Assembly: GCA_002269645.1 (NCBI GenBank)
Contig: NIVC01000323.1
Coordinates: 124,001 to 188,000, forward strand
Direction: 5' to 3'
Source of the DNA: Macrostomum lignano
Lineage: Eukaryota
Length of the DNA: 64,000 bases
Every line of letters starts with the position of its first letter. The stretch's first letter is position 1. The notes beneath the pieces were generated by a model, which was given only the letters and a program-made list of their open reading frames with translations, ran no database searches and was not told the DNA's origin. Below, one piece after another: positions 876-60,293 of this stretch. Made by a program: the position numbers and the translations under genes.

Positions 876-1062
876 AAGAACCACAGGTAGGATTGATAAA
901 GTATTTACAAAATTCGTTTTAATAATTCATAACTTCCCTATTTTAGCACTCCACCGCAATACACCTGGATGCACCACAATACACCTGCATGCACCACAAT
1001 ACACCTTCCCCTTTTTCTCCTTCCTTTTGTTCCTTTTTCTTCTTTCCTTTCAGAAACGAGGA

Positions 1063-4000
1063 ATGGGCCAAAGCCTGAGCCGCTATCAGGCCGTCACCAG
1101 CGGTAACATCACGGCAGTAAGAGCGCATCTGCGGCTTCAACTCGGACAAACACGGAAGACCCACTTTTGCATAGAAAATGCTCAACTGGCTGCGGAGCAT
1201 GGTCAGTTGGAAGTCGTCAAGTTTCTCGTGCCGACAGTCGCTGACCAAACAAAAAAAGATGATTGCTGCATCATAGCTACCAAATGTGCTGCAATCGATG
1301 GTCGGTTTGAAATCGTCAAGTTTCTCGTGCCGACAGTCGCTGACAAAACAAAAAAAGATGATTGCTGCATCAAAGCTGCCGTATATGCTGCATTCAGTGG
1401 CCACTTTGAAATCGTCAAGTTTCTCGTGCCGACAGTCGCTGACCAAACAAAAAAAGATGATTGCTGCATAAAAGCTGCCAAATTTGCTGCATTCAATGGC
1501 CACTTTGAAATCGTCAAGTTTCTCGTGCCGACAGTCGCTGACAAAACAAAAAAAGATGATTGCTGCATCAAAGCTGCCGAATATGCTGCAATCAATGGAA
1601 TTTTTGAAATCGTCAAGTTTCTTGTGCCGACAGTCGCTGACCAAACAAAAAAAGATGATTGCTGCATCATAGCTACCAAATGTGCTGCAATCGATGGTCA
1701 GATTGAAATCGTCAAGTTTCTCGTGCCGACAGTCGCTGACCAAACAAAAAGAGATGATTGCTGCATCAAAGCTGCCAAATTTGCTGCAGGCAAGGGTCAC
1801 CTTGAAATCGTCAAGTTTCTCGTGCCGACAGTCGCTGACCAAACAAAAAGAGATGATTGCTGCATCAAAGCTGCCGAATCTGCTGCAATCAATGGTCACT
1901 TTGAAATCGTCAAGTTTCTCGTGCCGACAGTCGCTGAACAAACAAAAAGAGATGATTGCTGCATCAAAGCTGCCGAATCTGCTGCAATCAATGGTCACTT
2001 TGAAATCGTCAAGTTTCTCGTGCCGACAGTCGCTGACCAAACAAAAAGAGATGATTGCCGCATCAAAGCTGCCAAATCTGCTGCAATCAATGGTCAGTTT
2101 GAAATCGTCAAGTTTCTCGTGCCGACAGTCGCTGACCAAACAAAAAGAGATGATTGCTGCATCAAAGCTGCTGAATCTGCTGCAATCAATGGTCACTTTG
2201 AAATCGTCAAGTTTCTCGTGCCGACAGTCGCTGACCAAACAAAAAGAGATGATTGCCGCATCAAAGCTGCCAAATCTGCTGCAGACGAGGGTCACCTTGA
2301 AATCGTCAAGTTTCTCGTGCCGACAGTCGCTGACCAAACAAAAAGAGATGATTGCCGCATCAAAGCTGCCAAATCTGCTGCAGGCGAGGGTCACTTTGAA
2401 TTCGTCAAGTTTCTCGTGTCGACAGTCGCTGACCAAACAAAAAGAGATGATTGCTGCATCAAAGCTGCCGAATCTGCTGTACGCGCGGGTCACATTGAAA
2501 TCGTCAAATTTCTCGTGCCGACAGTCGCTGACAAAACAAAAAAAGATGATTGCTGCATCAAAGCTGCCGAATATGCTGCAATCAATGGTCAGTTTGAAAT
2601 CGTCAAGTTTCTCGTGCCGACAGTCGCTGACCAAACAAAAAGAGATGATTGCTGCATTAAAGCTGCCAAATGTGCTGCAGGCAAGGGTCACGTTGAAATC
2701 GTCAATTTTCTCGTGTCGACAATCGCTGACAAAACAAAAAGAGATGATTGCCGCATCAAAGCTGCCGAATCTGCTGCAGGCGAGGGTCACTTTGAATTCG
2801 TCAAGTTTCTCGTGCCGACAGTCGCTGACCAAACAAAAAGAGATGATTGCCGCATCAAAGCTGCCAAATCTGCTGCAATCAATGGCCACTTTGAAATCGT
2901 CAATTTTCTCGTGTCGACAGTCGCTGACCAAACAAAAAGAGATGATTGCCGCATCAAAGCTGCTGAATCTGCTGCAGGCGAGGGTCACTTTGAATTCGTC
3001 AAGTTTCTCGTGCTGACAGTCGCTGACCAAACAAAAAGAGATGATTGCCGCATCAAAGCTGCCAAATCTGCTTCAGGCAAGGGTCACTTTGAAATCGTCA
3101 AGTTTCTCGTGCCGACAGTCGCTGACCAAACAAAAAGAGATGATTGCTGCATCAAAGCTGCCGAATCTGCTGCAGGCGAGGGTTACAATGAAATCGTCAA
3201 GTTTCTCGTGCCGACAGTCGCTGACCAAACAAAAAGAGATGATTGCTGCATCAAAGCTGCTAAATCTGCTGCAGGCGAGGGTCACAATGAAATCGTCAAG
3301 TTTCTCGTGTCGACAGTCGCTGACCAAACAAAAAGAGATGATTGCTGCATCAAAGCTGCCGAATCTGCTGCAATCAATGGTCACTTTGAAATCGTCAAGT
3401 TTCTCGTGCCGACAGTTGCTGACCAAACAAAAAGAGATGATTGCTGCATCAAAGCTGCCGAATCTGCTGCAATCAATGGTCACTTTGAAATCGTCAAGTT
3501 TCTTGTGCCGACAGTCGCTGACCAAACAAAAAGAGATGATTGCTGCATCAAGGCTGCCGAAGCTGCTGCAAGCAATGGTCAGCGGGGTATCGTCGAGTTC
3601 CTCATCTCGTGTCCCTCAATTCCAGATCAGAGAGTGAATCTCCGTTTGGATTGCGCAGTCGCGGCTTGCTCTCGTCTTCACGAAGATGTCGTTGAGTTCC
3701 TCGGCCTCGAGCCCGAATGGCTCTTCAAATCCAACACCATTCTTAGCTTTACCGCAGCAATGGCCATCGAAGGCAGGAACTCTGTGCTCACCGACATCCT
3801 CTCTCGAATGCAGCCAGCTCGCATCACACAGCTGCTCCGTCTCTCCATCTCTCAAAGACACGTCGCTCTTGCTGTCACACTGATCAAGGATGAGCGAGTC
3901 AGCTCACAGCATGTCGATCTGCCAGACAGCACTGGAGCCACTGCTCTCATGCTGGCAGCTGATGCAGGTCATCACGAGCTCATTGAGAATCTCATCGATC

Positions 4001-7000
4001 TCGGTGCGTCAGTGCGTGCTGAAGACAGTCAGGGTCGGACTGCTATGTCACGAGCGTGCAAAGCCGGTCACGTGCGAGCAGCCAAGGTTCTGATGGACAG
4101 AGGAGCGGATGCGAGTCATCGAGACGGTCGGCGTCTGACGTGTGCGCAGGTGGCACAGCAATTTGAGCAGTGGCAGGTGCTGCGGCTGCTGGATCTCAGT
4201 GGAGCGCTGTGAGTGAGGCGAGAATTTCGTGAATCTTTTCAGTACTGCATCGTGTTTTAGTAAAGTATTTCATTATTTTAATGCAAGAAAACGCTCGGTA
4301 AAAAGCTGTCTTATAATGGAAAACATTTCAAGCGTTTTCGTGTTGATTGCAAAAATATCCTAAAAACAAAAAAATTTTTGTCCGCTTTCTCCGGTCATCT
4401 GCTTCTGCCTGTCAATCCCTTTGCTTGAACTGGGCGACGCTGGAAATACAATGGGAGTTTCTGACTCAATGAAGTGATTTGTGCCGCATGAGAATTTCAG
4501 ACTCAACTGCTGTGAGAACCCTGGCTTTCCTTCCCGCATTGCAGAAGCCCAGAGGCCCGGCAGACAGCCGCTCACCGCTTGGATTCAGGACTACATCGGT
4601 GAGTCTGACCGGTTTTGACCGGTTCTGACCAGTCAACTGCCGCATTGCGCCTTCCAACAGGCTGGCAGCTTGGGGCAGAAATTGCAGCAAAACTCAGCAG
4701 GGTTGAGACTGGGTTGGACTGAGTGCTGCAGCTGCACTCTCAGCTCTCCTGCTTGAGATGCCAGTCTGAGTGCTGCAGCAGCTGCACTCTCAGCTCTCCT
4801 GCTTGAGATGCCAGTCTGAGTGCTGCAGCAGCTGCACTCTCAGCTCTCCTGCTTGAGATGCCAGTCTGAGTGCTGCAGCAGCTGCACTCTCAGCTCTCCT
4901 GCTTGAGATGCCAGTCTGAGTGCTGCAGCAGCTGCACTCTCAGCTCTCCTGCTTGAGATGCCAGTCTGAGTGCTGCAGCAGCTGCACTCTCAGCTCTCCT
5001 GCTTGAGATGCCAGTCTGAGTGCTGCAGCAGCTGCACTCTCAGCTCTCCTGCTTGTTCTGTCCATCCAACTCTGATTAAATCTCCCACACATTCCATCAT
5101 TCCAGGCTCTTAGACGACTCCCAGAAAGACAGGCGCCTGAGCGAGGAGCTGCATCGACTGCTCAGCGATGCGGGATTCACCAAGCAGAGAGCAAAGTGTC
5201 AGCAGAGACTGGCTGACTGGCTGGAAGGAGTCGCTCGAGTCCTAAGACAGGATGGCAGGCAGATGACGGGCAGCTACGCAGAAGGCTGGGCCAACAGTCT
5301 GGTGCAAGTGAACGGCAGGACAGCTGCAGACTCGGACATTGACTGGACTGTGCTGGTTGGTGGGCAGCTGTTCCATCTGGAAGGTGGCTGCATGGGAATA
5401 TTTGATTCCTGCAGAGACGCCACTCGGCTGCAGGTCACGGAGGGCCACGCACAGGTGGCAGTGGGAGCAGGTGAGTGAGGCTGGGTTCATCATCAGAATG
5501 CTGAGATCCGCATGCAACTGGAAGCCTATTAATTTTGCTCAATTTTAAATTCGCAACCGAGTGGCGCCCAGCCTCCAGCAGCTTCTGTGACTGCGAATTT
5601 CGGCTTGGGTGCTGAAACAAGCGGCAGGTGAAATTGAAAAGAAAAATCTGATGCCGACTGCTGAGACAATTCAGGCAATTGGGTTTTGAATTCACAGGCT
5701 CCGATTGCAGCAGAGTGGGTGCCGCGGTGCTTGGGTGACCCACGGTAGGCGGCATGGCTCTGCTGAGGTGCTGCTGCTCTCACTTGGAAAATTTCAAACA
5801 AAATAAACCGAAGCCGCCCTGACTGCCTGATTGGTGCCTTGCTGCGGGGCACTGAGTCCTGATGATGCTTGAGCAGCTGTGCTGAGCTGCAACCTGATGA
5901 AGCCAGAGCAGCTGAAGCTGAAGCTGGGCGAACTCAGATGGTGCAGAGGCTCATGCCTCACAGGTGCATTTGTTTGGCTCTTCAGAGAGCGTCGAACTTC
6001 TGTGGCGTCTCACCGAGCAGCTTGGGCTGTAAACTGAGCCAGACGGAGGGCATTGCAACCCTCGCCACGCAGCGAGAGGCCCCCCCACTCCCACTGGAGT
6101 CTCTAACGCCTTTGCAGGCTGGGCAACGCCGCCCACAATGTACACATTTTTATTGATATTAAATAAGAATAGCTATTGTATTGATGTATTGATTAGTAGA
6201 TGAAAATGGAGTTGCAAAAGCAAAATTCCCAACCGGCCAGGAGAAACTCTGCAGTTTCAAACCAATCCATCTTTTTCACTCGCCACAAAGCGACTCTCCG
6301 CTCACTGCGCTCTGCAGGCAGCCAACCTGCAGTGACAGCCACGGCGTGCGGTGTGCGGCCTGCACTGGACACGTGCCATGCGATCGAGTGCTGCAGCAGT
6401 TTCTGTGAGGAAAGAAGTAGAAAACCGGTTCTATTCGATAACAGAGTTCACCTCGTGCGGGCGACCAGACCGAGCTCGACCAACGAGCTCAGAGTGAGCT
6501 TCAGCTTCCAAGAGAAAGACATCATGAGACGACTGAGCACAGTCCAGGGCCAGCTGTTCACACTCATCAAGTTCATCTTCAAGACACACTTGCCGCTCAC
6601 TCTGGACACACCTGGACTCAAGACCTACCATGCAAAGACTCTGCTCTTCACAATGCTGGCGAAGCATGGCACATATCCTAGAGCTGAGGCTTGGCAGTCC
6701 CACAATCTGATCGCTCTGCTCAAGGAGTCTCTCGACATGATGCTGAGCTTCATCGACTCGAGCAGCTCGCCCGATGAGTGCATGCCGCACTTCTTCATGC
6801 CCGACGCTCCGCTCTACTTCAAGAACGCTGGAATCGGCGGCGACTTCGACAATACAAAGGCGAGGGTTCGAGACCGACTTTGTGAGCTGAGAAGCGACAT
6901 CGGCGGAGTGGTCGAGCAGCTGAGGAGACTCGTGAGACCTCTGCAGTCAGAGAAGTTCTACTTTCACCCGTTCACTCTGCTGCCTCTGACAGCGCCGCCT

Positions 7001-7960
7001 GCTGTCACGGAGATCAGGGAAGGAAGTGATGGCAAAGAGTTTTACTACAAGTTCGCAGACGTGTACAGTGTGGTGCACCGGTGTGTGAGCGAGCTGCAGT
7101 CGGATTCGAGCGACAGAGACACCCTGATGAGGCAGCTCGGCCTCCCGCATGAGCTGCAGTGGTGCAAGTGCGCCGCCCTATGCATGACCGCCATGACGCA
7201 TTTGAAGTTCGGAGAATCTGAGGAGGCTGGGAGACTCGCGATGGAGCTGCAGAGACATCAGGTTGAGTCAGGGTTCAAGCCACAGGATATTCAAGGGACA
7301 GCCTTAAGCGAAACTGAATTGCCAGAAGACTCAGACTGGGCGTGGAGGTTCTGCCTCCCCTGCGACTCTCCGCCTCACTTCCCATTTCTTCCCGAGTTCA
7401 CGCAGACTCTGTTCACAGCCAGACTGTCGCAGCCTCTCTCCTCCCACCTGTACGTGAACTTCCGCTGCCTGAGCTGGAGTCTCCAAGCTGAGCTGCTCCG
7501 CAATCGCGCACCTGCAATCGCATTCGATCATTGGATTGAACAGCTGCTTGGAGACCCGGACTCGGAAGAGCTGCTTGGAGACCCGGACTCGGAAGAGATG
7601 CTTGGAGACCCGGACTTGGAGGAGCTGCTCACTCTGGCTCACTACAGCGACTACCGCGAGCACGTGGAGCTCAGCCTGCAGCAGATGGAGATTATCGAGA
7701 AAGAGAGACGCGTCGCCATGGAGACGCAGGACGAGGAGAAGATCGGCTGGGTCAGGCAGAAGCGGTGGCGAGTTTCGAACCGCAGCGGCAGCGACAGCGG
7801 CGCTCACCGCAGCAGGGAAGATGAGGAGCGGAGGCTGTGGGCGAGGGCGAGGCTGCGGCGAGACGGGGCCGACTTGGGTCGCCTGGTTGCCATGGAAACT
7901 GCAGCGGAGCAGAGAGACAGCTGGACTCACGCCAAGCTCAATCGGGTTAGGCTGCAGTGA
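1063..7960 (+). CDS. Ankyrin-repeat / Mab-21 (cGAS-like, cGLR) nucleotidyltransferase fusion, copy 1. Exons 1063-4208, 5106-5470, 6318-7960; about 1717 aa.
   Basis: ATG at 1063 follows a polypyrimidine tract and CAG. Donor GTGAGT at 4209 (phase 2) matches acceptor TCCAG|G at 5105 (phase 2). Donor GTGAGT at 5471 (phase 1) matches TGCAG|GC at 6317 (phase 1). The exon sum is 5154 nt, a multiple of 3. Motifs: GSYAEG, DSDIDW, DTCHAI, LRVSFSFQEK, LKTYHAKTLLF, MPHFFMP. Identical intron phases occur in the paralog. Confidence 0.82.
1186..3600 (+). repeat. Coding 99-bp (33-aa) ankyrin-like array, 24 full units plus 1 partial
   Basis: Unit AAINGHFEIVKFLVPTVADQTKRDDCCIKAAES. DNA period of 99 (1861 vs 1960). 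It matches the ankyrin core AAxxGHxEIVxxL and is followed by canonical repeats (TGATALMLAADAGH, QGRTAMSRACKAGH). Confidence 0.95.
4719..5056. repeat. 50-bp minisatellite, about 6.7 near-identical copies, in intron 1 of the ANK-cGLR gene
   Basis: CAGCTCTCCT recurs at 4741, 4791, 4841, 4891, 4941, 4991 and 5041. Confidence 0.95.
5742..6159. repeat. About 418-bp dispersed repeat, second copy at 15239-15657
   Basis: Near-identical sequence from ACGGTAGGCGGCATGG to TTTATTGATAT at both loci. The ORF track shows paired translations (5869 vs 15366). Confidence 0.9.
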
Positions 7961-8162: not shown

Positions 8163-8640
8163 TATTGTCTGCACATGCTGTTGGATTGTCTGCAGATGCT
8201 GTTGGATTGTCTGCACATGCTGTTGGATTGTCTGCACATGCTGTTGGATTGTCTGCAGATGCTGTTGGATTGTCTGCAGATGCTGTTGGATTGTCTGCAC
8301 ATGCTGTTGGATTATCTGCAGATGCTGTTGGATTGTCTGCGCATGCTGTTGGATTGTCTGCACATGCTGTTGGATTGACTGCAGATGCTGTTGGATTGTC
8401 TGCACATGCTGTTGGATTGTCTGCAGATGCTGTTGGATTGTCTGCAGATGCTGTTGGATTGTCTGCAGATACTGTTGGATTGTCTGCAGATGCTGTTGGA
8501 TTGTCTGCGCATGCTGTTGAATTGACTGCAGATGCTGTTGGATTGTCTGCACATGCTGTTGGATTGTCTGCAGATGCTGTTGGATTGTCTGCACATGCTG
8601 TTGGATTGACTGCACATGCTGTTGGATTGTCTGCACATCC
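8163..8640. repeat. 21-bp minisatellite (CTGTTGGATTGTCTGCACATG), about 23 copies, degenerating to about 8830
   Basis: Direct reading; 7-aa periodic ORFs in several frames. Confidence 0.95.
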
Positions 8641-13270: not shown

Positions 13271-14352
13271 GACTAGCAGCTCAAGTATATGGCGGGACAA
13301 ACAGACAAGATAGAACTGGGCGCTAATGGCCTCGTATTCACAAGCAAAATACACTAATTAACAAACATTTAAAGAATGACGCGATCAAACAAAAATATTG
13401 AGCATCAAAAACTGATCATCCCCACGCCTTGCCGGTTTTTAGTTGCCAACGCTGAGCTTTCCTACAAGATTGACCAAAGCTGGAACGCTACAAAAATACG
13501 CAGTATTGGAGTGAGCTCAAGACAACAGAAATGTAGCGAGCACCGCAGTTATGACATGAAAGTCCACAATCGTAGGCAGTTTTTAGCAAAGAATTTTATT
13601 AGAAACGGCAAGATGATGCTGTGCAGCAAAGATTCTGCAATATTCTCTGAATTGAATGAATTCGATCACTTATTCTGTAATCGCTTTTTACAGCTTTTTC
13701 CAAGATTTTAAGAGTGTTGCTAGACAGCAAAGTCTATGCAGAACCTTTGCTACGCTGCAATCAATGCTGACAAACCATAATGCGAGTCAGTTTGAAGGAA
13801 CCACTGTTGGACGTATTTCAGCAGCAAGCGGTTAAACACAGCTCAAATTTGGACCTTCCTCAGAGTGACTGCCCACCGAGGTGCTTCGGGACGCATGAAA
13901 CTGTAGAGAATGCGCTACAGGCAGCGGCGGCGGCACCGGCGGTGTTGGAGTTGACGGCAGCGGAGGTTTCCACAGCTCCGCCGCTCTGATGCGTCGGTGG
14001 TGATTTTTACACAATGTTGTGATATTGTCGACGGCTGGCGTTGAAAAAGTACTCTGGATTTTGCACAGTCGATGTGCTGTGCGGCACTGCATTCGACTGC
14101 GTCTCCGGTGATCTTGGCGCTTCGTCCCGACTGTTGCTGGAATCCGCTCGAATCGGTCTCAAGTAGCCATCACCGGATGTACCAGCAGATGACTGGTCAT
14201 TTAGCTGAAAGAGCGGATGTCCCTCTGCAGAGATTTTGCATGGATCGGAACTGTTGCTAGAAATTCATGCGAAAATTCAATAGTTGAAAATAAATGATAG
14301 AGTCTCATTTTACCTCCCAGAGAATCTGGATCTGGGAGGATGATGATGGAGC

Positions 14353-15228
14353 TGAGGATCTGGGCAAGGTGGGTGAAGAAGCTGAGGATCTGGGCAGATG
14401 GGTGATGAAGTTAAGGATCTGGACAGGTGGGTGATGTAGCTGAGGATCTGGGCAGATGGGTGATGAAGCAGAGGATCTGGGCAGGTGGGTGATGAAGCCG
14501 AGGATCTGGGCAGATGGGTGATGAAGCCGAGGATCTGGGCAGGTGGGTGATGAAGCTGAGGATCTGAGCAGGTGGGTGAAGGAGCCGAGGATCTGGGCAG
14601 GTGGGTGATGGAGCTGAGGATCTGGGCAGATGGGTGATGGAGCCGAGGATCTGGGCAGGTGGGTGAAGGAGCCGAGGATCTGGGCAGATGGGTGATGAAG
14701 CTGAGGATCTGAGCAGGTGGGTGATGGCGCTGAGGATCTGGGCAGGTGGGTGATGGAGCTGAGGATCTGGGCAGATGGGTGATGAAGCTGAGGATCTGGG
14801 CAGATGGGTGAAGGAGCCGAGGATCTGGGCAGATGGGTGATGAAGCTGAGGATCTGAGCAGGTGGGTGATGGCGCTGAGGATCTGGGCAGATGGGTGATG
14901 AAGCTGAGGATCTGAGCAGGTGGGTGATGGCGCTGAGGATCTGGGCAGATGGGTGATGGAGCTGAGGATCTGGGCAGGTGGGTGATGGCGCTGAGGATCT
15001 GGGCAGGTGGGTGATGGAGCTGAGGATCTGGGCAGATGGGTGATGGAGCTGAGGATCTGGGCAGGTGGGTGAAGGAGCCGAGGATCTGGGCAGATGGGTG
15101 ATGAAGCTGAGGATCTGAGCAGGTGGGTGATGGCGCTGAGGATCTGGGCAGGTGGGTGATGGAGCTGAGGATCTGGGCAGATGGGTGATGAAGCTGAGGA
15201 TCTGGGCAGATGGGTGATGGAGCTGAGA
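14353..15228. repeat. 29-bp minisatellite (GAGGATCTGGGCAGATGGGTGATGAAGCT), about 30 copies
   Basis: Period of 29 (14471 vs 14500). It explains the Pro/Ser-rich minus-strand ORFs. Confidence 0.95.
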
Positions 15229-16683
15229 ATCCGGTAGGACGGTAGGCGGCATGGCTCTGCTGAGGTGCTGCTGCTCTCACTTGGAAAATCTCAAACAAAT
15301 TAAACAGAAGCCGCCCTGACTGCCTGATTGGTGCCTTGCTGCGGGGCACTGAGTCCTGATGATGCTTGAGCAGCTGTGCTGAGCTGCAACCTGATGAAGC
15401 CAGAGCACCTGAAGCTGAAGCTGGGCGGACTCAGATGGTGCAGAGGCTCATGCCTCACAGGTGCACTTATTTGGCTCTTCAGAGAGCGTCGAAATTCTGT
15501 GGCGTCTCACCGAGCAGCTTGGGCTGTAAACTGGGCCAGACGGAGAGCATTGCAACCCTTGCCACACAGCGAGAGGCGCCCCCACTCTCACTGGAGTCTC
15601 TAACGCCCTTTGCAGGCTGGGCAACGTCGCGCACAATGTACACATTTTTATTGATATGTATGATATGTATATGTATTCTTGCAAAATCTCCTAAGAAGTC
15701 AGGAATCTACAGGTTAATGATTGCCTTTGTTTTCTTCCTTTAAATACGAAACGCCGGAGTCGGTAAAGACTTTTGCAGCATATGCAGCTTCTCAGGCTCC
15801 AGCATGCACTCCATTCGTTAGAAATATTCATCAATAGCTGTCTTACGCGTGCTGAAAGCAGATCTACACATGAAACACCGCTGCAAAAATGAATTGCCAT
15901 GAACATCGCGGTTCCCAAGCGCAAGACGATTCAGAAGCTGAGAGAGAGTCTGCTAGATGGACGAAGTTGGCTGCTTCGCTGTGTTTTCAGTCGGCAGACA
16001 ACTTCAAGAGGAGACAGGCAAAAGCAACTGAACAAGAATCTTCTGTAGAGTTATTTTTCTTTCTCCAAAGATGAGCACAATCTCATTCATTGCAATTCTT
16101 CTAACTTCGTAGTTGTTGGGGAGATCGCATTGAAAACACGATCGCCAAGACAAACACCCAAGGCCTGACTGACTGTTTGAGCTACTCACAGTCGATATAC
16201 AGTGGTCCTTGCCTGGACTGTACTCGTCAACTCTGAAAAGTCGTTGAGCTCTAAAATTGATAAAATGGTCTTTTCTTAAAATTCTTTTCTCTTATAGATT
16301 TCTGATTCAGCTGCAACTACTTATTACTTTTGCTTTGAACTTTCAATTTTCAGTTCTAACATCGAGGGGCGCCAGCACCAAGGGGCGCCAGCACCAAGGG
16401 TCATTGCACAGTTTACGAGTACAATGAATTGAAGCTTTTAATAATTCTAGAGAGTAACGAAAAAATTGCCGATATGTATCGAAAAACATCTTTATCACGC
16501 GGTAAATACATACATTGAATAGCTTGAAAAGTGTTAAGGAAAGGCAACAAATAGGCACAATAAAGTAATTACGACTAGATTTATGTGCGGGACATCCATG
16601 GATTCTCAGTTTGGAAAGTGTACATTTAAATTCGTGCAAACACGCATCATGTTGCAAGTGACATGCACATGTACATGCACAGC

Positions 16684-18964: not shown

Positions 18965-20164
18965 GTGCCCACCCAGTATTTATGTGCGTGCGCGGCCCCC
19001 GCCCGGTTCTCGCCCTCCCTGCTTTCTATCTACCGCTACGAACTTTGTGCTTGTGAAACTACAACATTGGTCGAGCATTGGTCATGCTACAAGTGGTTCA
19101 GCGAGTCAAACTACTGGTTTCAGGCCGAGCAGACGTGTCTGTCTCACCGGGCTCACCTCGCGTCTATCCAAAGGGAGCAAGAGAACCGACTGGTAGGCCG
19201 ACTGTCTCACTGCAGAGACGCCTGGATCGATTTGTTCGCCACTGACCTCGATCGTCTGGCCGACCCTATAAGCTACAGGTGGACGGACAGCGGCAGCGTA
19301 GGGAGCTTCGAGAGACACAACTTCTCTCAGCTGGACAGCGTTCACAAGCCTCTGATCCGAAGTGACGGTGAGTGGTGGCTCAACTCGCTGAATCACGAGC
19401 GGCACCTGTTTTTTTGCAAGTTGAGCGCCGACTCCAGCATTCTCGTCGACTGGTGGAGGTCGAGCGGCCGATGTCCCAGCGGCTGGTGGCTGCACGACAA
19501 GCAGTGCTACGTGATGCCGCAGTTTGAGGCCAACTTCCACGAGGCCAACTTCTACTGCCAGCGAAACTCGTCGCAGCTGGCGTCGGTGCTCACCCAGTCT
19601 GAGCTGGACTTTCTGAACAAGCTCAGCTTCGAAATCGACAGCTGTGAGTCGCTAGAGCTGCTCGACTCGGTGTGGCTCGGCCTCATCAAGCTGAACCCCT
19701 GCTTCCCTGACAGTGCGGGTCGCGAGCTCTGCTACCAATGGACGGACTTCTCAGAGAAACACGACAACAAGCTGCCCGCATGGGAGACTGGACACCCGGA
19801 AAGCGCGGACTGGACTGTGAACTGCGTCACGCTGCCAGCTGGTCAACTGCGCAGTGACAGGTGCCACAGCAGGCACAGGTTCGTGTGCAAGACGGAGGCG
19901 TCGGACAGCACCTCCCCACCACCACCACAGGTGGACGGCCTCGTGGCTGCGTTCGACTTCAGGAGGGGCCTCGACAACCTGGTGGACCCGCACACCTTCG
20001 CCATCGAGGACCAGTTCGGGGTGGAGAGATCAGCAGAGCCTGCTTTAGACGAAACGCAAGCGATTTTATTTATTCTAGAGAGTTTTAAAACGTCGGAGCT
20101 CCCGCGGCATTCAATGAGTCGATTTGGAACGCTGACGAATGGACCATGTTCTGGGGGAACATAA
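18965..20164 (+). CDS. Exon or ORF with two tandem C-type lectin domains; gene boundaries uncertain
   Basis: CYKWF..WFQAEQTC...HLASI..EQEN...WIDL..YRW, and CPSGW...CY....FHEANFYC....QLASV...WLGL...QWTD...W..GHP...NC...C..RHRFVCK. No clear ATG or signal peptide. Confidence 0.75.
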   Translation: MPTQYLCACAAPARFSPSLLSIYRYELCACETTTLVEHWSCYKWFSESNYWFQAEQTCLSHRAHLASIQREQENRLVGRLSHCRDAWIDLFATDLDRLADPISYRWTDSGSVGSFERHNFSQLDSVHKPLIRSDGEWWLNSLNHERHLFFCKLSADSSILVDWWRSSGRCPSGWWLHDKQCYVMPQFEANFHEANFYCQRNSSQLASVLTQSELDFLNKLSFEIDSCESLELLDSVWLGLIKLNPCFPDSAGRELCYQWTDFSEKHDNKLPAWETGHPESADWTVNCVTLPAGQLRSDRCHSRHRFVCKTEASDSTSPPPPQVDGLVAAFDFRRGLDNLVDPHTFAIEDQFGVERSAEPALDETQAILFILESFKTSELPRHSMSRFGTLTNGPCSGGT

Positions 20165-21584: not shown

Positions 21585-22587
21585 CTACAGAAGCAACATC
21601 TCGATCTCTTTCAGCGAGTAGGAGTAGCCAAAGTTGCGACTCCAAACAACTCCCATTGCTTCAGCACCTCCGATGGCAGAAGATGAGTCTTTGTACTCTC
21701 CGTTCAGGTAGGTGTGGTGACAGTTGTCGAACCACCAGGCTCCATTACGAAGATTTGCGCAGTTGCCAGAGCCGTTGGTGTCATGATCGGCGTCCTTCGT
21801 GCTGAACTGCATGCCGCAGTGATGCGTGGGGCTGTCGCCGATGCCGGCGCTGCCGGAGAAGCCGGACACGTTCAGCCGGTAGTTGTCAGACTCGGGACCC
21901 ACGGAGAAGCTGGAGTACTCGGCCCAGTGCTCAGAGTCGTTCCACGCCTTCATCAGGAGCCTCAGCTTCCGAGGACCAGAAGCAGTGAGAGCGTGAAGAG
22001 AGTTCAGTCCTGGGAAGATGCGGGCGTCATGGCGCTGCTTGTCATTGAAATCCGAACTGGAAAAGCAAGCGAATGCAGCAGATCTGGGATGCACTCACCG
22101 ATCCAGTAGTTTCCGTCGGGTCCCTCGCCGAACTCGCTCTGGTACTGAGTCCAGATGCGGTAAAAGTCCACTGAGCCGGACACCCTGTGCACTGCCTGCT
22201 GTCTGCAAGGTGACAGGTGCACAGGTGTGCCAGCTTTTCTACTCTGCGTTAGCACTGACGTATGAAACTGAGTGACTAACCCACACTCTCTGAGCTCTCT
22301 GAGCACTTCCTGCAGTGGCTCAGGCCCAGGCGACACCTGTAGTGAGCGCACAGGCCGGAGCTGGCGTTGAACGACACCAGCTGCACTGCGGAGTCGCTGC
22401 TGGCAGCATACGAGCATTCAGAGTCGCTTCGGGCTGGCAGCGACCTCACAGCCACGTACTCGGAGAGGTTCTCGCGGCTCGACTTCCACATCTGCCCAGA
22501 GTCGGCGGCGGCTTCGGTCACGTGATGCAGCACTGCAGCCAACAGCAGCAGCAGCAGAGCGGCTTGACGAGCGGTTTAGAGCTGCAT
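21585..22587 (-). pseudogene. Secreted fibrinogen-domain protein (FReP/ficolin-like) with a possible PAN-like N-terminal region; nonsense codon at position 4 as assembled
   Basis: Exons 22202-22099 ([10 protein letters not shown]...FG...NYWIG) and 22009-21585 (LNSLHALT...FSTKDADHD..C...GAWWFDNC...LNG) are joined by a GTGAGT..CCCAG intron. Upstream reads ATG CAG CTC TAA then TARQAALLLLLLAAVLHHVTEAAA, a signal peptide. The junction of the N-terminal exon is uncertain. Confidence 0.7.
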
Positions 22588-24569: not shown

Positions 24570-25429
24570 GCGTCGGAAGATGGCAGAGGATGAGAGGAAA
24601 GAGCGAGGAGGCGGAGAGAGAGGGCGGAAGGAGAGGGAACTGGGAGAGGGCAGATGTAGAGAGCGGAATCTCAGCTCATTCCCCGCGCTCAACAAACTGA
24701 CCAGTTAAGCTGAGTCTTCCGTGATTTCTCAGAGTTTCCAGAATTCAGTCCGCAGTCACTCTCTCAGAGGCGGTGGGGAGGGCCTTGCAGCTCACTGCAG
24801 CTCACTGCATGCACAGCGGGGCTGCATTCGAAGGCTCTGCTGGGCCCGGCTTGGAGGCGGAGGCGCAGCTGATGGCGGCAGAGCCGCTGCAGTTGCTGCG
24901 GGCGGCCCCACGGCCTCCCTGCCTGACTTTGCATGCGGGCTGCGGGAGCGCCGGCTGCGCCACCCAAGCCAGGGAGCGCTGGAGATGTGCAAGAGTGACG
25001 TCAAAGAGTGGGGCGCAGGCTGACCAGCTTAGGCTGGAGAAACGTTTAATATCTGCGGAGTCTCGGTGCTTTTCGAATAGAAACCAGCAATTGGCGACTT
25101 CTCCCCTGTTATGGAGGCAACAAAGAAAGGAATAAAACAGTTTGAATTATCTACAAGTAGCTTTTCACAGAATTTCTTCAAAAAGATTATGTTAAAAGCA
25201 AGAAGCATCAGCCCTGAAAGCCAGCCATCTGGCCTCAGATATCAGCATCTCCTGTGAGCTTTGGCATCAAAGCCTCCCTTTAGGGCTTGACTTAACCCTA
25301 AGTCTGCCTTTGATACCTGGCCAACAAAAAACTCCCAATTGACCTTTGAGATCTCAGCAGCCCCATATGCCACAGAATTCGTCAGAGACAGACATCTCAG
25401 GAATGCATCAGAGTGGACCACATGTACTT

Positions 25430-54144: not shown

Positions 54145-57100
54145 TCAGCTTTTCTTTTCCGACCACGTCTCTGTGTTTCCAGGCCGGGCCGAACTACTGC
54201 TGCATCGTCTCTCCAGCTTCTGCCTGACCCTGCCGATCTTTTCCTCGTCCTGCGTCTCCATGGCGACGCGTCTCTCTTTCTCGATCATCTCCATCTGCCG
54301 CAGGCTGAGCTCCACGTGCTCGCGGCAGTCGCTGTAGTGAGCCAGAGTGAGCAGCTCCTCCAAGTCCGGGTCTCCAAGCAGCTGTTCAATCCAATGATCG
54401 AATGCGATTACAGGTGCGCGATTGCGGAGCAGCTCGGCTTGGAGACTCCAGCTCAGGCAGCGGAAGTTCACGTACAGGTGGGAGGAGAGAGGCTGCGACA
54501 GTCTGGCTGTGAACAGAGTCTGCGTGAACTCGGGAAGGAATGGGAAGTGAGGCGGAGAGTCGCAGGGGAGGCAGAACCTCCACGCCCAGTCTGAGTCTTC
54601 CGGCAATTTGGTTTCTCTTTGCTCTTTCCCTTGAATATCCTGTGGCTTCAACCCTGACTCAACCTGATGTCTCTGCAGCTCCATCGCGAGTTTCTCAGCC
54701 TCCTCAGATTCTCTGAACTTCAAATGCGCCATGGCGGTCATGCACAGGGCGGCGCACTTGCACCACTGCAGCTCATGCAGGAGACTGAGCTGCCTCATCA
54801 GTGTGCCTCTGTCGCTCGATTCCGACTGCAGCTCGCTCACACACTGATGCACCACACTGTACACATCAGCACACTTCGCGGAGTATAAGTATTCAGGTGG
54901 TTTTCTGATCTCCGTGACAGCAGGCGGCGCTGTCAGTGGTAGCAGAGTGAACGGGTGAAAGTAGAACTTCTCTGACTGCAGAGGTCTCACGAGTCTCCTC
55001 AGCTGCTCGACCACTCCGCCGATGTTGCTTCTCAGCTCAAAAAGTCGGTCTCGAACCCTCGCCTTCGTGTTGTCGAAGTCGCCGCCGATTCCAGCGTTCT
55101 TGAAGTAGAGCGGAGCGTCGGGCATGAAGAAGTGCGGCATGCACTCATCGGGCGAGCTGCTCGAGTCGATGAAGCTCAGCATCATGTCGAGAGACTCCTT
55201 GAGCAGAGCGATCAGATTGTGGGGCTGCCAAGCCACAGTTAAAAAGCCATACTTCTCTAGCATGAAGAAAAGCAGAGTCTTTGCATGGTAGGTTTTGAGC
55301 CCAGATGTGTCCAGATATTTGGGAAGGTATTTTTTAAAAATGAATTTCAAAACTAAAAAGAGCCGACCATGGTCAGTTGAGAGGCTTCGAATTTTGCTTC
55401 TTTCAACGAAGCTGAAGCTCACTCTGAGCTCGTTGGCTGAGTTGGGTCGGGTGGCCCTCACGAGATGAAGGGGCGGGTCAAGTCCTATTCCGATACTGCA
55501 CTCTCCTCCCTTGATTCCCGATCCATTGCAGCACCGGATAGCATGACAGAGGTCCTGTGCAGGCCGCACTCCGCAGGCTGGGCTACTCTTAGCAGGCTGG
55601 CTGCCTGCGATGAATGCAAAACGATAATGTCGAGTAGTTTCTGCTTTTAAAAATAGTCTGAAAAGACGGATAAAAACTAACCAGATCCGGTGGCAACAAC
55701 TGCGTGACCCTCCGAAACCAGAAGCAGCCGAGCGTTTTTGCATCCATCTGACTGCCGCATGCAGAATCCTTCCAGATGCAGCGCTTGCCCATCAGGCAGC
55801 ACAGTCCAGTCGATGTCCGAGTCTGCAGCTGTCCTGCCGTTCACCTGCACCAGACTGTTGGCCCAGCCCTCTGCGTAGCTGCCCGTCATGTGCATGCGAC
55901 CATTGTCCTGTGGGAGGACTTGAGCTGTGGATTCCAGCAGGGAGGCCAAACTCTGTTGGCACCGAGCTCTCTCTTGTGTGAAACCCGCCGCTTCAAACAG
56001 TGCGTGCAACTCCTCACTGAGCCAGTAGTCGCGCTCTTCATCATCTCCGGCTCTGTAGGTGATTTTTAAGCAAACTTAACGAAACGCAAATACATAAATA
56101 CATAAATAAAAAAGAAACAAACAAACTGAAACTTCAGTTCAAGTTTCATGCTTAATCAGTCTGAGCCAGATTCACACATATTTCACGCGAGCAACAGTCT
56201 CAGATGCGGTGTCTCGGTGTTCGACCCATTTACTTGTCATGCGGCAAAGCCGCACGTCAGTGGACCATCAGTCAAAAATAATGATAAGATAAGCGATGCG
56301 TTCTGCCTGAAAAATTATACCTTCTGTCAAGTATTCTCGGGCTACAGATGCCTGCAAACCACTGCCCCACTTCAAATATATTGCGACTTTGTAAGAATAT
56401 CTTAGTAAGAATATATATAACTGAGACATTTAAAAAGCTTTTTACTTTTTAAAACTGTCTTTTATGTACGATCGCAGCACTAGAAATTCATTGAAAATCA
56501 AGAAACAAAGTATAGCAGTAAACAAAAACTCACATAAAAAGATTGAAAAATTTCTGGCATTTTGGCTTCTCGCTCTGTCTGAAGTAGGAAATCCATTGCA
56601 ACATCTTTTATCCTTTTAAACAAATTTATGTAGCTTTCTCAGTTGTCATTTTTCATTTCTTTTTCATTTTTCATTCAAGTTGTCTTTTATCAGTTGAACT
56701 ACTCACCCAGATATCAATTTCATGAGCTGCTGTGAGTGACCGAACTGCTTAGCCACCTGAGCACACGTCAGACCCCGACCGTCTCGATGACTCGCATCCG
56801 CTCCTCTGTCCATCAGAGCCTTGGCTGCTCGCACGTGACCGGCTTCGCACGCTCGTGACAGAGCAGTCCGACCCTGACTGTCTTCAGCGCGCACTGACGC
56901 ACCGAGATCGATGAGTTTCTCAATGAGCTCGTGATGACCTGCATCAGCTGCCAGCATGAGAGCAGTGGCTCCAGTGCTGTCTGGCAGATCGACATGCTCT
57001 GTGGTGACTCGCTCATCATTGACCAGTGTGACAGCAAGAGCGACGTGTCTTTGAGAGATGGAGAGACGGAGCAGCTGTGTGATGTGAGCTGGCTGCATTC

Positions 57101-60100
57101 GAGAGAGGGTGTCGGTGAGAACAGAGTTCCTGCCTTCGATGGCCATTGCTGCAGTGAAGCTGAGGATGGTGCTGTGTTGGAAGAGCCAGTCGGGCTCGAG
57201 GCCGAGGTAGGCAACGACATCTTCGTGAAGACGAGAGCAAGCCTGCTCGACCAGGAGATTTTTGTTTGCAGAGGCCGCTCTGTCAAAAATTGCTTTCAAA
57301 ATGTCAACCTGACCTTCCTTTGCAACAGTTTCTGCAATCTGAATGCAAAAATCTTTAGCAATGGCTGAATCTGCAATAGTCTGCAAGAGATTCTTGACGA
57401 TATTCCAGTTGCGACCACTTGCCGCTCGTTTTGCCACCTCAATGCAATAAAAATCGCGAATCTCATTGCTGGACACCGAATCAATGAGGTATTGAAGCTC
57501 TTCAGGTGGTTCCGGTCCTGAGAAATAATTGATCGCACTTGCGACTTCCATGCAGAACTGATCCTTGAAGCCGTCGGCACCAGCAGCCTGCACCAAGCGT
57601 TTGACGGAGCTCAACTTGTTCTCATCATTAGCGAATACTTCTGACCTCATCCAGCATTGGCTTCGCTGCTTCAGGTCCGCAACAGTCTCAACAAGCAACT
57701 GGAAACATTTCAATCGATTTTGACCGGCTGATGATTTTGCAGCAAGGAAGCAAATCTCGTCCTTGTCGTTCGGGTCAGTGACGGTTGACAGGAGAAATTC
57801 CAGTTCTTTAAATCTACCAAAGCTTGCTGCTGCTACAGCTGCATCTCTGCAACAGTTCCTGCGCATTGCAGCATCTGCAATCCTGCTCAAGTAGGATTCA
57901 ATTTTCTTAAAGTCACCAGATTGTGCAGCCATAATTGCTGCCCGCATTCTGCACTGGTCCTGCGTTTCAGAACTTGAGGCCGAGTCAATTATAAACTGGA
58001 TGAGCTCATTATAACCATATTTATTCTTCCATCTGCCAAACAATTGAATAATGGCCTCCAGGCAGCACTTGTTCTTGACAACAGGGTCCGGAACTGCCTG
58101 CAGGAGTAGTTTTACTGTGTCACAATGATCATTAATGGCTGCCGTCCGAGTTGCCTCCATGCCAACAAGGTTTCTATTATCTGACTCAGCCATTGTTTTT
58201 AGAAACTGTTTCACTATTTCAAACTCGCGATCACTGACTTCCGAATTCCCAGACTTCCTTTGGTTCTGTTGATTCAAGTTTTGCTCAACAACTGTCCTAA
58301 GTATTCTTTCAACTTCTTCCCATATTTTAAATTTCGCTGCATAGCTCGCAAATTCTAGTAAGAACTGACGCCTCATACTTTTATCGAGAATATTCAATGA
58401 AAAATTCAACACTTCAGTTGAAATCAGCGGCCAGGTTAGTAGATCATTGATAAATGCTCCTTTTGACTTGTATAGAGCCGCAAAACTCTGATCCCTCAGA
58501 TTCTGACCAATGATTCGCTGCAAAAAGTACTTCCCTTTGCTCCAACCATATTGCTCCAGAATTGCAGCTGCTGCCGCAATGCAACAGTCATTCTTAGCGC
58601 CGATATCAACTACTGAAGCCAGTAAAAATGTCAGAAAGTGCATGTTACGAGTACTCGTACCTGGCTTCGTAGGTGTGACAATCTCTAAGCAGCACTTGTC
58701 CTTTATGTCTTGAGAAGCGATTGCCTTTATAAAATTCTTTGCAATATCAATTTGACCTTGTTGAGCTGCAAATTGAGCCAAAGAATTGCAGCACTGATCT
58801 TTCAGTGTCTGGTCGAAAATTAAGTTCACCAGAAAGGACCAGGCTGGCCAGTGGATTTTGCTCGAAGCTCGAATCAGATCAGAGCAGCAGCGATCTTTTA
58901 ATTCTTGGTCGGAGATCGCTTGAACCAGAAATTCCACAACCGTCCAATAAATGCTTTGCGCAATTATATTTTTGTGTTCGAAGACACTGATGACGTTTAA
59001 AGTCTCCACACAGCACTTATCTCTCTGAGACTGTGAAGAAAGTTTAAAGAAAAAGTACTTGGCCTCTTGTATGCAACCAGTTGATGCATAGTACTTCACA
59101 GCCTGCATGCAGCACTCGTCCTTTACATCTTGGCGCACAACTGCAGGCAACATGCATTTCACCAGCCCAAACTGGTTGCTCCATGCGGCAGACTCTGCAG
59201 CTCTTGCCCAGCACTGCTCCTGCACGCTCCGCTCTGACGCCCTCTGCACAGCGAATTGCACGACTTCGAGGCGACCAACTGCTGCAGCAGATTCTGCGGC
59301 TATGAGACACCACTGGTCTTTTGCTTGACGGTCAGTAAGAAACTCAAAAAACATTTGCCCCTCTGGCACCTGATTTTTGACCTGTTCATCTCTTTCATTG
59401 TCCCTGATGATATCGGCTTGATGTTCTCCAAGACGCAATAACTCCCCATTGTTAGAAGAATAACCTTTAATAGCTTTCTGAGTAGCCTCAATGCAGCACT
59501 CATCCTTGAGCTTCTGATCAGCAATTGACTGCACCAAGTCTTTCGTCAGGTCAAGGCGTCCGGCCTCGGCGTAGATGACTGCAACCTGTTTGCAGCACTG
59601 GTCTTTTGCGCTTCTGTCGGTGATTCGCTCGGACAGAAACTGCACGGTATCGAACAGGGCGAATGCGGCTGCGAAGCATGCGGACTCGGAGCAGCACCGG
59701 TCTGTCACCGCTGGGTTGGAGGCGGCCTGCAGCAGGAGCTTCACCACCTCCCACTGGGACTCGCTGGCTGCGAGTTGGCACACCTCGCCACAGTAGCTGT
59801 TCTTGATGTCCTGGTCAGAAGTTTCTTGAAGCAGAAACAGGAACAGATTCCAGTGACGCGCGCTTACAGCCAAGTTCATTGCCTTCAGGCAGCAGCTATT
59901 CTTTACATTCGGGTCAGCCGCAGTCTGAACCAAAAACTTGATCGTCTCCCATTGACTTGACCTTGCAGCAGACTTCACCGTCTTCTGACAGCACAGGTCT
60001 TTCACAGATTGATCGGCGATTGCTTCCACAAGGAACTTCAGCATCGCCCATTCGTTTGACAGGGCGGCGACTTTTGCAACTTCGAGGCAGCACTCGTCCT

Positions 60101-60293
60101 TTAGGCTCGAGTCTTCAGCTGCTTGCACCAGAAGTCTGACGAGTTCCCACTGGCGAGAGCGAGCAGCCAATCGAATAAGTTTGTCTGCAGCTTTGCCTTT
60201 CTCAGCCTCATCTCCGATTGCCTGTAGGAATGCCTCAACCGCCTGCGAGTCTCCGATGGCCACAGCATCCTTGATGTTGACTGGTTCGGCCAT
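54145..60293 (-). CDS. Ankyrin-repeat / Mab-21 (cGAS-like, cGLR) nucleotidyltransferase fusion, copy 2. Exons 60293-56707, 56052-55682, 55604-54145; about 1805 aa.
   Basis: Donor GTGAGT at 56706 (phase 2) matches CTACAG|A at 56053 (phase 2). A 77-nt GTTAGT..CGCAG intron is phase 1. The exon sum is 5418 nt, a multiple of 3. Motifs: GSYAEG, DSDIDW, DLCHAI, LRVSFSFVE, LKTYHAKTLLF, MPHFF. Confidence 0.82.

What the first reader, a model, noticed from the sequence alone, without database searches (positions are those of the whole stretch)
1063..7960. Hidden giant receptor: ankyrin array spliced in frame to a cGAS-like (Mab-21/cGLR) nucleotidyltransferase
Seen in sequence: the ankyrin ORF stop (TGA 4210-4212) lies inside a consensus donor (CT|GTGAGT). 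The next exon (5106) has no in-frame Met near its start and begins in the complementary phase, giving ...SGAL-LLDDSQKDRRLSEELH...GSYAEG...DSDIDW. A second intron joins to DTCHAI...LRVSFSFQEK...LKTYHAKTLLF...MPHFF. The same two junctions and phases occur in the paralog at 54-60 kb. Established knowledge: GS, DxD and a third Asp form the metal-binding site of cGAS/DncV-like NTases, and animal cGLRs act as innate pattern-recognition receptors that make nucleotide second messengers. Inference: this is an expanded family in which an ankyrin solenoid is the ligand sensor or autoinhibitory module of an active cGLR, possibly responding to proteins rather than nucleic acid. I cannot tell whether this family has already been described.
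Basis: partly seen in the sequence, partly recalled or inferred. Interest (0 to 1): 0.92.

Follow-up and report, generated by a model that had tools for sequence, protein, structure and literature searches.

The report
Flatworm ankyrin-fused cGAS-like receptor genes
The window holds two intact copies of a large Macrostomum flatworm gene that joins a long ankyrin-repeat array to a cGAS-like enzyme domain.

Summary
The sequence observations hold. The TGA at 4210-4212 lies inside a GTGAGT donor, exon 2 (5106-5470) and exon 3 (6318-7960) continue the frame, and the paralog at 54-60 kb has the same phases. The four-exon models give 1735 aa and 1820 aa with no stop.

The C-terminal part is a real cGAS/Mab-21 fold. 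AlphaFold2 gave pLDDT 90.6, and the top 50 Foldseek PDB hits were all cGAS or MAB21L1. It carries G-S, D-I-D and, 59 residues later, a third Asp, which matches the published cGLR criterion.

The organism is Macrostomum. An M. lignano contig is syntenic at 82-92% DNA identity, and its gene BOX15_Mlig015315g1 (1845 aa) has the same four exons.

The family is not hidden. Many M. lignano ANK + Mab-21_C models are public. Li et al. 2023 describe ANK-fused cGLRs, list M. lignano members with Ank_2 domains, and cloned two members of this subfamily. Neither carries the note that marks active enzymes.

Whether the ANK array senses a ligand or autoinhibits the enzyme is untested.

Verdict: new member of a known kind, moderate-to-low interest.

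The parts
1063..4208 (+). Copy A exon 1. Start MGQSLS..., then a 24 x 33-aa ANK-like repeat array followed by a canonical ANK C-terminal module. It ends in phase 2 at CT|GTGAGT.
   Evidence: ORF and Pfam Ank_2 (5e-126) and Ank_4 (6.5e-95). Donor read. The start matches homologs P0007, P0011 and P0021.
1199..3581 (+). Homogenised 99-bp tandem array inside exon 1: 24.1 copies, 92% matches, no indels. Variation is concentrated at repeat positions 26, 27, 30, 31, 33 and 1.
4545..4598 (+). Copy A mini-exon, 54 nt, encoding (L)SPEARQTAAHRLDSGLH(R).
   Evidence: Borders cattgcag| and |gtgagtct. The homologous peptide is present in P0006, P0007, P0008, P0009 and P0028.
5106..5470 (+). Copy A exon 2: N-terminal helices and first strands of the NTase core. 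It carries G1122-S1123 (5269-5274) and D1144-I-D1146 (5335-5343).
   Evidence: The residues are invariant in alignments A2 and A3.
6318..7960 (+). Copy A exon 3: the rest of the NTase core with the third Asp D1206 (6368-6370), the Mab-21_C lobe (about 6596-6814), and a roughly 290-aa conserved tail with no known domain. Stop TGA at 7958-7960.
   Evidence: Pfam PF20266 at 25.3 bits against a cut-off of 24.1. Also.
56707..60293 (-). Copy B exon 1: a diverged 33-aa repeat array plus the canonical ANK module. Donor GG|GTGAGT.
56534..56578 (-). Copy B mini-exon, 45 nt (QSEKPKCQKFFNLF).
   Evidence: The same exon is annotated in the syntenic M. lignano gene (L001 13767-13811).
55682..56052 (-). Copy B exon 2, with G1268-S1269 and D1290-I-D1292.
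54145..55604 (-). Copy B exon 3: third Asp D1352, the Mab-21_C lobe and the tail.
   Evidence: PF20266, 25.7 bits.

Best explanation
The window, from a Macrostomum flatworm, carries two intact paralogous four-exon genes. Copy A is on the plus strand at 1063-7960 and encodes 1735 aa. Copy B is on the minus strand at 60293-54145 and encodes 1820 aa.

Each encodes, in order:
- a long array of atypical 33-residue ankyrin repeats;
- a conserved canonical ANK module;
- a short linker, encoded by the mini-exon;
- a cGAS-like receptor (Mab-21 fold) nucleotidyltransferase domain with a complete G-S / D-h-D / X59 / D active-site motif;
- a conserved tail of about 290 aa with no known function.

They are additional members of the large M. 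lignano ANK-cGLR family, which is already annotated and was catalogued by Li et al. 2023.

Shown here: the gene structure, the fold, the motif conservation and the family membership.

Inferred: like other cGLRs, the protein rests inactive and, once activated, condenses NTPs into a nucleotide second messenger. The ANK array would be the regulatory or ligand-binding (probably protein-binding) part.
For: Gene model:
- The four-exon ORFs have no stops and all introns are GT-AG.
- Similarity between the copies is confined to the exons.
- Copy B aligns end to end with the annotated protein P0001 (78.6% identity). Its syntenic M. lignano locus shows the same four exons.

Fold:
- A profile of the family hits cGAS (E 5e-6) and Drosophila cGLR1 8gjy (6.6e-6), and more weakly MAB21L1 (0.09) and MB21D2 (0.3), in the PDB.
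- hhalign against a cGAS/cGLR alignment gives probability 97.1% and E 5.5e-11.
- Of ten distant profile hits scanned (family-profile E about 1e-12 to 1e-34), six carried PF20266 and five of those also PF03281 above its cut-off. They are five of the six with E about 1e-12 to 1e-16.
- AlphaFold2 gave pLDDT 90.6 and pTM 0.92.
- The top 50 Foldseek PDB hits are all cGAS or MAB21L1, with E from 3e-9 and TM 0.47-0.58.

Active site:
- G-S and D-x-D are invariant, and the third Asp is present in at least 90% of rows, in a 14-sequence family alignment (down to 32% identity). S, D-x-D are invariant, and G and the third Asp at least 90%, in a 26-sequence alignment that includes five proteins with PF03281 at or above its cut-off and one just below.
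- Both window copies have the motif with a 59-residue spacer.
- The residues lie on the expected elements of the model: strand, GS, helix; the start of strand 74-87; and strand 134-142.

Selection: dN/dS is 0.38 in the NTase core.

Literature: Li et al. 2023 define cGLRs by exactly these criteria and include M. lignano ANK-cGLRs.

ANK as a binding module: repeat variation is focused on a few positions. These include the two that align with the canonical 'AAxxGH' variable positions of ankyrin binders (the mapping to the binding face is my inference).
Against: - No transcript evidence was obtainable. Every relative found comes from genome annotation.
- Pfam's NTase model PF03281 does not reach E <= 1 on exon 2, or E <= 10 on full-length homologs. 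Only PF20266 passes, and only just.
- The two NTase constructs of this subfamily in the Li et al. screen (#92, #93), and three more M. lignano constructs, have no 'active' note in Table S3. Enzyme activity is therefore unproven. The screen used only dsDNA and poly I:C, and constructs without the ANK region.
- dN/dS of 0.6-0.8 in the ANK C-terminal module and the tail suggests weak constraint or recent gene conversion.
- Whether Macrostomum has a STING-type receptor was not determined.
Confidence: 0.72

Rival explanations
1. The Mab-21 domain is a catalytically silent scaffold, as proposed for MAB21L1/2 or MiD49/51. The protein would act by ANK-mediated protein binding or assembly only, without making a nucleotide signal.
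For: The M. lignano constructs of this subfamily carry no 'active' note in the Li et al. screen table. PF03281 is not detected. MAB21L1 is among the Foldseek and PDB hits.
Against: The full GS / DxD / D set is invariant or nearly so across paralogs down to about 32% identity. By contrast, Li et al. state that Mab21L1/2/3 lack a predicted functional active site. The paper itself attributes in vitro silence of many cGLRs to unknown ligands.
Confidence: 0.2
2. The reader's exact three-exon transcript (4208 joined directly to 5106, mini-exon skipped) is the main or an alternative isoform.
For: Both mini-exons are multiples of three (54 and 45 nt), so skipping keeps the frame. Some annotated homologs, such as P0017 and P0019, show no counterpart of the mini-exon peptide between the ANK module and the NTase.
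Against: P0001, P0006, P0007, P0008, P0009 and P0028 include it. The mini-exons have good GT-AG sites. The peptide SPEARQxAAHRLDSGLHR is conserved among copy-A-type paralogs.
Confidence: 0.15
3. These are two separate genes: an ANK-only protein ending at TGA 4210-4212, and an independent Mab-21 gene downstream.
For: A real stop codon ends the ANK ORF, and no transcript data were available here.
Against: In copy A, exon 2 has no ATG, GTG or TTG before the GS motif, and coding conservation reaches its acceptor. The phases are compatible in both paralogs and in the M. lignano ortholog. Dozens of independent gene models in two annotation sets join the parts.
Confidence: 0.05

Closest known systems
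ANK-fused cGAS-like receptors (cGLRs) of Li et al. 2023 (PMC9980059), in particular the M. lignano entries PAA68676.1 (BOX15_Mlig016402g1, my P0021) and PAA93208.1 (Table S3 #93 and #92)
   Same: The architecture is the same (N-terminal ANK repeats plus a cGLR NTase domain). So is the signature GSYAEGWANSL...DSDIDW...RPAxD...ELRVSFSFxEK...GLKTYHAKT...CMPHFF. Copy A is 76.6% identical to P0021 over 1020 aa. All come from the genus Macrostomum.
   Different: The window copies are not identical to any public model (best 74-79% identity). Copy A has an unusually homogenised 24-unit repeat array. The published work cloned only the NTase part and reports no activity or ligand for these proteins.
cGAS and Drosophila cGLR1 (PDB 4k9b, 8gjy and others)
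   Same: Bilobed Mab-21/cGAS fold, the G-S activation-loop motif, an acidic triad with the same spacing class, and the WRLSFS-type motif (here LRVSFSF).
   Different: Only 12-17% sequence identity. There is no evidence of the nucleic-acid-binding surface or zinc thumb. The protein has a large ANK N-terminus and a roughly 290-aa C-terminal tail. Ligand and product are unknown.
MAB21L1 / MB21D2 (orphan Mab-21 proteins)
   Same: Same fold. They appear among the PDB hits.
   Different: According to Li et al., Mab21L1/2/3 lack a predicted functional active site. The window proteins keep it.
Repeat-array innate immune receptors such as NLRs and TLRs (analogy only)
   Same: A variable repeat solenoid is fused to a signalling module, the family shows lineage-specific expansion, and there are signs of exchange between paralogs.
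   Different: There is no NACHT or TIR domain, the repeats are ANK rather than LRR, and no binding or immune data exist.

Membership tests
cGLR (criteria of Li et al. 2023) | Predicted structural homology to cGAS | tested here: met
   AF2 pLDDT 90.6. Foldseek PDB top 50 are all cGAS or MAB21L1, E from 3e-9. Profile against the PDB gives cGAS 5e-6 and cGLR1 6.6e-6. hhalign gives 97.1%. The model was made from the homolog P0028, not from the window protein itself.
cGLR (criteria of Li et al. 2023) | G[S/G] activation-loop motif | tested here: met
   G1122-S1123 in copy A and G1268-S1269 in copy B. Invariant in alignment A2.
cGLR (criteria of Li et al. 2023) | [E/D]h[E/D] X50-90 [E/D] catalytic triad | tested here: met
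   D-I-D, then 59 residues, then D in both copies. D-x-D is invariant. The third Asp is present in at least 90% of rows in A2 and A3.
cGLR | Ligand-dependent synthesis of a nucleotide second messenger | not testable with these tools
   Needs biochemistry. The relatives #92 and #93 in Li et al. Table S3 have no 'active' note.
cGLR-STING pathway | A cognate STING-type receptor in the same genome | not tested
   No eukaryotic genome collection or STING query sequence was at hand. Macrostomum is absent from the held copy of Li et al. Table S5.
Pfam Mab-21 superfamily | PF20266 (Mab-21_C) above the gathering score | tested here: met
   25.3 bits (copy A) and 25.7 bits (copy B) against a cut-off of 24.1.
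Pfam Mab-21 superfamily | PF03281 (Mab-21 NTase domain) above the gathering score | tested here: not met
   No hit at E <= 1 on exon 2 or exon 3, nor at E <= 10 on full-length homologs. Homology of this part shows only through the family profile, which reaches PF03281-bearing proteins at about 1e-12 to 1e-16, and through the fold.
Ankyrin repeat proteins | Pfam ANK models above threshold | tested here: met
   Copy A: Ank_2 5e-126 in 16 stretches and Ank_4 in 19 stretches. Copy B: Ank_2 8e-32. The 33-aa array units are atypical (DDCCIKAAESAAINGHFEIVKFLV...).
M. lignano ANK-cGLR family (public gene models) | End-to-end collinear similarity, shared exon structure and synteny | tested here: met
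   Copy B against P0001: 78.6% over 1843 columns. The same four exons appear in L001, with flanks syntenic at 82-92% DNA identity.

The most novel reading that the evidence does not exclude
The Macrostomum ANK-cGLR radiation comprises 84 clusters at 50% identity with E <= 1e-30. It could be an NLR-like repertoire of protein-sensing receptors. In this reading the fast-evolving, recombining ANK arrays bind pathogen or self proteins and relieve autoinhibition of the cGLR domain. That would explain why isolated NTase domains were silent with nucleic acids, and it would be the first non-nucleic-acid ligand class for cGLRs.
Probability: 0.2. Interest if true: 0.7.

Novelty: new member of a known kind. 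Interest (0 to 1): 0.3.

Why it matters
The gene model matters mainly for annotation. Two large genes would be mis-called as ANK-only plus orphan fragments if the stop inside the donor site were taken at face value.

Biologically, ANK-fused cGLRs are a recognised but functionally unstudied minority of cGLRs. The held literature holds no ligand, product or role for them. Macrostomum lignano is a laboratory model, so this large family is a practical place to test whether a cGLR can be controlled by a repeat-solenoid sensor rather than by direct nucleic-acid binding. The window itself adds only two more members and a clear example of repeat homogenisation and exchange between paralogs.

Tried and rejected
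- Pfam on exon 2 alone gave nothing relevant. The only hit was T2SSK_1st at E 0.2.
- phmmer of a whole homolog against the PDB was swamped by ANK hits.
- A first family profile of 10 close paralogs gave only E 0.07-0.8 to cGAS, cGLR1 and MAB21L1. A first AlphaFold2 run on that shallow alignment was unusable (pLDDT 50). Both improved once paralogs at 31-39% identity and distant Mab-21 proteins were added.
- I looked for transcript-derived relatives (Logan or TSA) that could prove splicing. Every relative traced back to two M. lignano genome annotations, or to one 3.2-kb metagenome contig.
- I looked for later functional work on ANK-cGLRs and for Macrostomum cGAS/STING literature. Nothing turned up beyond Li et al..
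- No STING sequence was available from the paper's supplements to search with.
- I considered the reading 'two separate genes' and the reading 'pseudogene'. I rejected them because the ORFs are intact, the phases are conserved, similarity is confined to the exons, and NTase-core dN/dS is 0.38.
Window exons went to the database tools separately, and database homologs stood in for the spliced product. The spliced ORFs were assembled only in local scripts, to check frame, length and identity.
Full report
**What is in the sequence.** The window is eukaryotic. On the plus strand a 1061-codon ORF (1027-4212; first ATG at 1063, MGQSLS...) is made almost wholly of 33-residue repeats. Pfam scores these as ankyrin: Ank_2 at 5e-126 in 16 stretches and Ank_4 at 6.5e-95 in 19 stretches. 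The array is 24.1 copies of a 99-bp unit at 92% identity with no indels. A canonical ANK module follows it.

The ORF ends ...GGA GCG CT|GTGAGT, so the stop TGA at 4210-4212 lies inside a consensus donor. Exon 2 starts after ttccag| at 5106. Its frame opens only nine codons upstream of that acceptor, and it holds no ATG, GTG or TTG until 5263, two codons before the GS motif. It ends G|GTGAGT at 5470/5471. Exon 3 starts after ctgcag| at 6318, in the frame of the 6200-7960 ORF.

On the minus strand the paralog (ANK ORF 60293-56703; last ORF 55743-54145) has the same phases.

**Correction to the gene model.** Annotated homologs carry about 15-19 extra residues between the ANK end and the LSEELH helix. 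The matching mini-exons are present in the window. Copy A has 4545-4598 (54 nt; cattgcag|...|gtgagt; SPEARQTAAHRLDSGLHR). Copy B has 56578-56534 (45 nt; QSEKPKCQKFFNLF).

The four-exon models give 1735 aa for copy A and 1820 aa for copy B, with no internal stop and GT-AG at all six introns. DNA similarity between the two copies is limited to three blocks that sit inside the exons. These are 3663-4163 (94%), 5137-5451 (75%), and 6314-7763 (83%), the last beginning 4 nt before the acceptor. The introns (336/507/847 nt against 128/481/77 nt) do not align. That pattern is what coding exons of one gene would show, not a chance frame match.

**Organism and public gene models.** The best relatives are all Macrostomum lignano proteins. 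Copy B aligns end to end with BOX15_Mlig015315g1 (P0001, 1845 aa, 78.6% identity). Copy A aligns with P0002 and P0006 (74% and 68%).

The P0001 locus (GCA_002269645.1, NIVC01000102.1, 760-786 kb) is collinear with window 35-63 kb at 82-92% DNA identity. P0001 maps onto it as the same four exons, including a 45-nt mini-exon. The window is therefore either a homeologous segment of M. lignano or an ortholog in a sister species. I could not tell which.

Dozens of public models from two annotation sets combine ANK with Mab-21_C. So the fusion is not hidden. Those models are genome annotations, however, and I found no transcript-derived sequences. Splicing is strongly inferred but not directly observed.

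**Is the C-terminal part a cGAS-like NTase?** Pfam detects only the C-terminal lobe. PF20266 scores 25.3 and 25.7 bits against a cut-off of 24.1. PF03281 is never detected.

A profile of 14 paralogs, reaching down to 32% identity, gives these results:
- In the PDB it hits cGAS (5e-6) and Drosophila cGLR1 (6.6e-6), and more weakly MAB21L1 (0.09) and MB21D2 (0.3).
- hhalign against a small cGAS/cGLR alignment, taken from the Li et al. table, gives 97.1% probability and E 5.5e-11 over the C-lobe.
- Against 1.84 billion representative proteins it finds 1040 hits at E <= 1e-3 and 84 at E <= 1e-30.
- Of ten distant hits scanned, six carried PF20266. Five of those also carried PF03281 above its cut-off, and one fell just below it.

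AlphaFold2 on a shallow alignment failed (pLDDT 50). With 26 sequences it gave pLDDT 90.6 and pTM 0.92. The top 50 Foldseek PDB hits were then all cGAS or MAB21L1, with E from 3e-9 and TM 0.47-0.58.

G-S, D-I-D and a third Asp 59 residues later are present in both window copies. They are invariant or at least 90% conserved in the family and in the wider alignment. In the model they sit where a Pol-beta-type site needs them: strand, GS, helix; the start of strand 74-87; and strand 134-142. This meets the criterion Li et al. used for cGLRs: cGAS-like structure, G[S/G], and [E/D]h[E/D] X50-90 [E/D]. NTase-core dN/dS between the copies is 0.38.

**What is already known.** Li et al. 2023 (PMC9980059) make three relevant points. 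They state that some cGLRs carry ankyrin- or TPR-repeat modules. They state that most, not all, platyhelminths lack cGLRs. Their Table S2 lists M. lignano proteins with Ank_2 domains: PAA67649, PAA58690, PAA68676, PAA86972, PAA45980 and PAA68216.

Their Table S3 lists five M. lignano constructs for the biochemical screen. Numbers 92 (PAA93208.1) and 93 (PAA68676.1, BOX15_Mlig016402g1, my P0021) have the same GSYAEGWANSL...DSDIDW signature as the window genes.

The screen used NTase constructs with dsDNA and poly I:C only. The authors caution that many cGLRs are probably silent for want of their true ligand. I found no later functional work on ANK-cGLRs in the held library.

**How it most likely works.**
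- Shown: one gene, an ANK array, a cGLR fold, an intact catalytic motif, and an expanded family.
- Inferred: a resting enzyme that makes a nucleotide second messenger when activated, with the ANK array as the regulatory or binding part.
- In favour of a binding role: variation among the 24 near-identical repeats is concentrated at positions 26, 27, 30, 31, 33 and 1. By my alignment to the canonical repeat, positions 30 and 31 are the 'AAxxGH' positions that are varied in designed ankyrin binders. This mapping is inference.
- The copies are mosaics. dS is saturated in the array, about 0.17 in the ANK C-terminal module and the tail, and 0.51 in the NTase core. Copy A 3652-4163 is 92.8% identical to the M. 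lignano P0001 gene, higher than the 82.6% for P0001's own syntenic partner. This points to exchange between paralogs.
- The main rival is a catalytically silent Mab-21 scaffold. It is kept at about 0.2 because no activity has been shown.

**Verdict.** The structural interpretation is right. The claims of 'hidden' and of possible novelty are not right, because the family is annotated and catalogued. These are new members of a known kind. The open question worth testing is whether the ANK array controls the enzyme.

Noticed in passing
Window 3652-4163 against L001 13148-13659; segments of copy A against copy B: Divergence between the paralogs is mosaic. dS is saturated in the ANK array, about 0.17 in the ANK C-terminal module and the tail, and 0.51 in the NTase core. 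The ANK C-terminal module of copy A is 92.8-94% identical at DNA level to copy B and to the M. lignano P0001 gene. This suggests gene conversion or domain exchange among family members.
   Followed up: partly
Window 1063-1080: Copy A starts MGQSLS. Homologs start MGQNLSS (P0007) and MGQNQSR (P0011, P0021). All fit the N-myristoylation pattern, which hints at membrane anchoring. Copy B starts MAEPVN and does not fit.
   Followed up: no
Related proteins P0008, P0030, P0031, P0037: The same conserved ANK C-terminal module is joined to protein-kinase domains in other M. lignano models. P0008 reads ANK + cGLR + kinase. These could be real fusions or merged gene models.
   Followed up: no
Related proteins P0130, P0131, P0133, P0136 and the C-terminus of P0005: A second, divergent subfamily (31-39% identity) has canonical ankyrin repeats and a GSFSEGWGNSL...SDID NTase. 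P0133 has His in place of the third Asp.
   Followed up: partly
Window about 7000-7960 (copy A tail); 7551-7620: A conserved extension of about 290 aa follows the NTase domain and has no Pfam match. It includes the unit LGDPDSEE(L/M), present 3 times in copy A, once in copy B and many more times in P0016. Its function is unknown and it was not modelled.
   Followed up: no
Window 18965-20164 (+), 21585-22094 (-), 49577-50275 (+): ORFs with a C-type lectin domain, a fibrinogen C-terminal domain and a caspase domain lie between the two ANK-cGLR copies. Also present are a UBC E2 (40000-40464), a 3'-5' exonuclease (42313-43650), a Methyltransf_28 fragment (47617-48120) and GWT1 (61742-63648, minus strand).
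   Followed up: partly
Whole window, e.g. 108-875, 4724-5055, 8164-8638, 14328-15231, 22572-24570, 36297-37542: There are 21 minisatellite rows. They include a 36-bp unit x 55 copies, and a 50-bp x 6.6 array (99% identical) inside intron 2 of copy A. Several create long spurious ORFs on both strands.
   Followed up: no
P0129 (JGI metagenome contig, 3238 bp): This is the only relative not from an M. lignano record. It is a 467-aa exon-3-type protein, 67% identical, on a short environmental contig, presumably from a related flatworm in the sample.
   Followed up: no
Window 35-63 kb against L001 (M. lignano NIVC01000102.1, 760-786 kb): The two are collinear at 82-92% DNA identity, but the window has extra sequence (about 38.7-49.6 kb) between matched blocks. 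No public protein is identical to the window's genes. The window is either a homeolog or from a sister species.
   Followed up: partly
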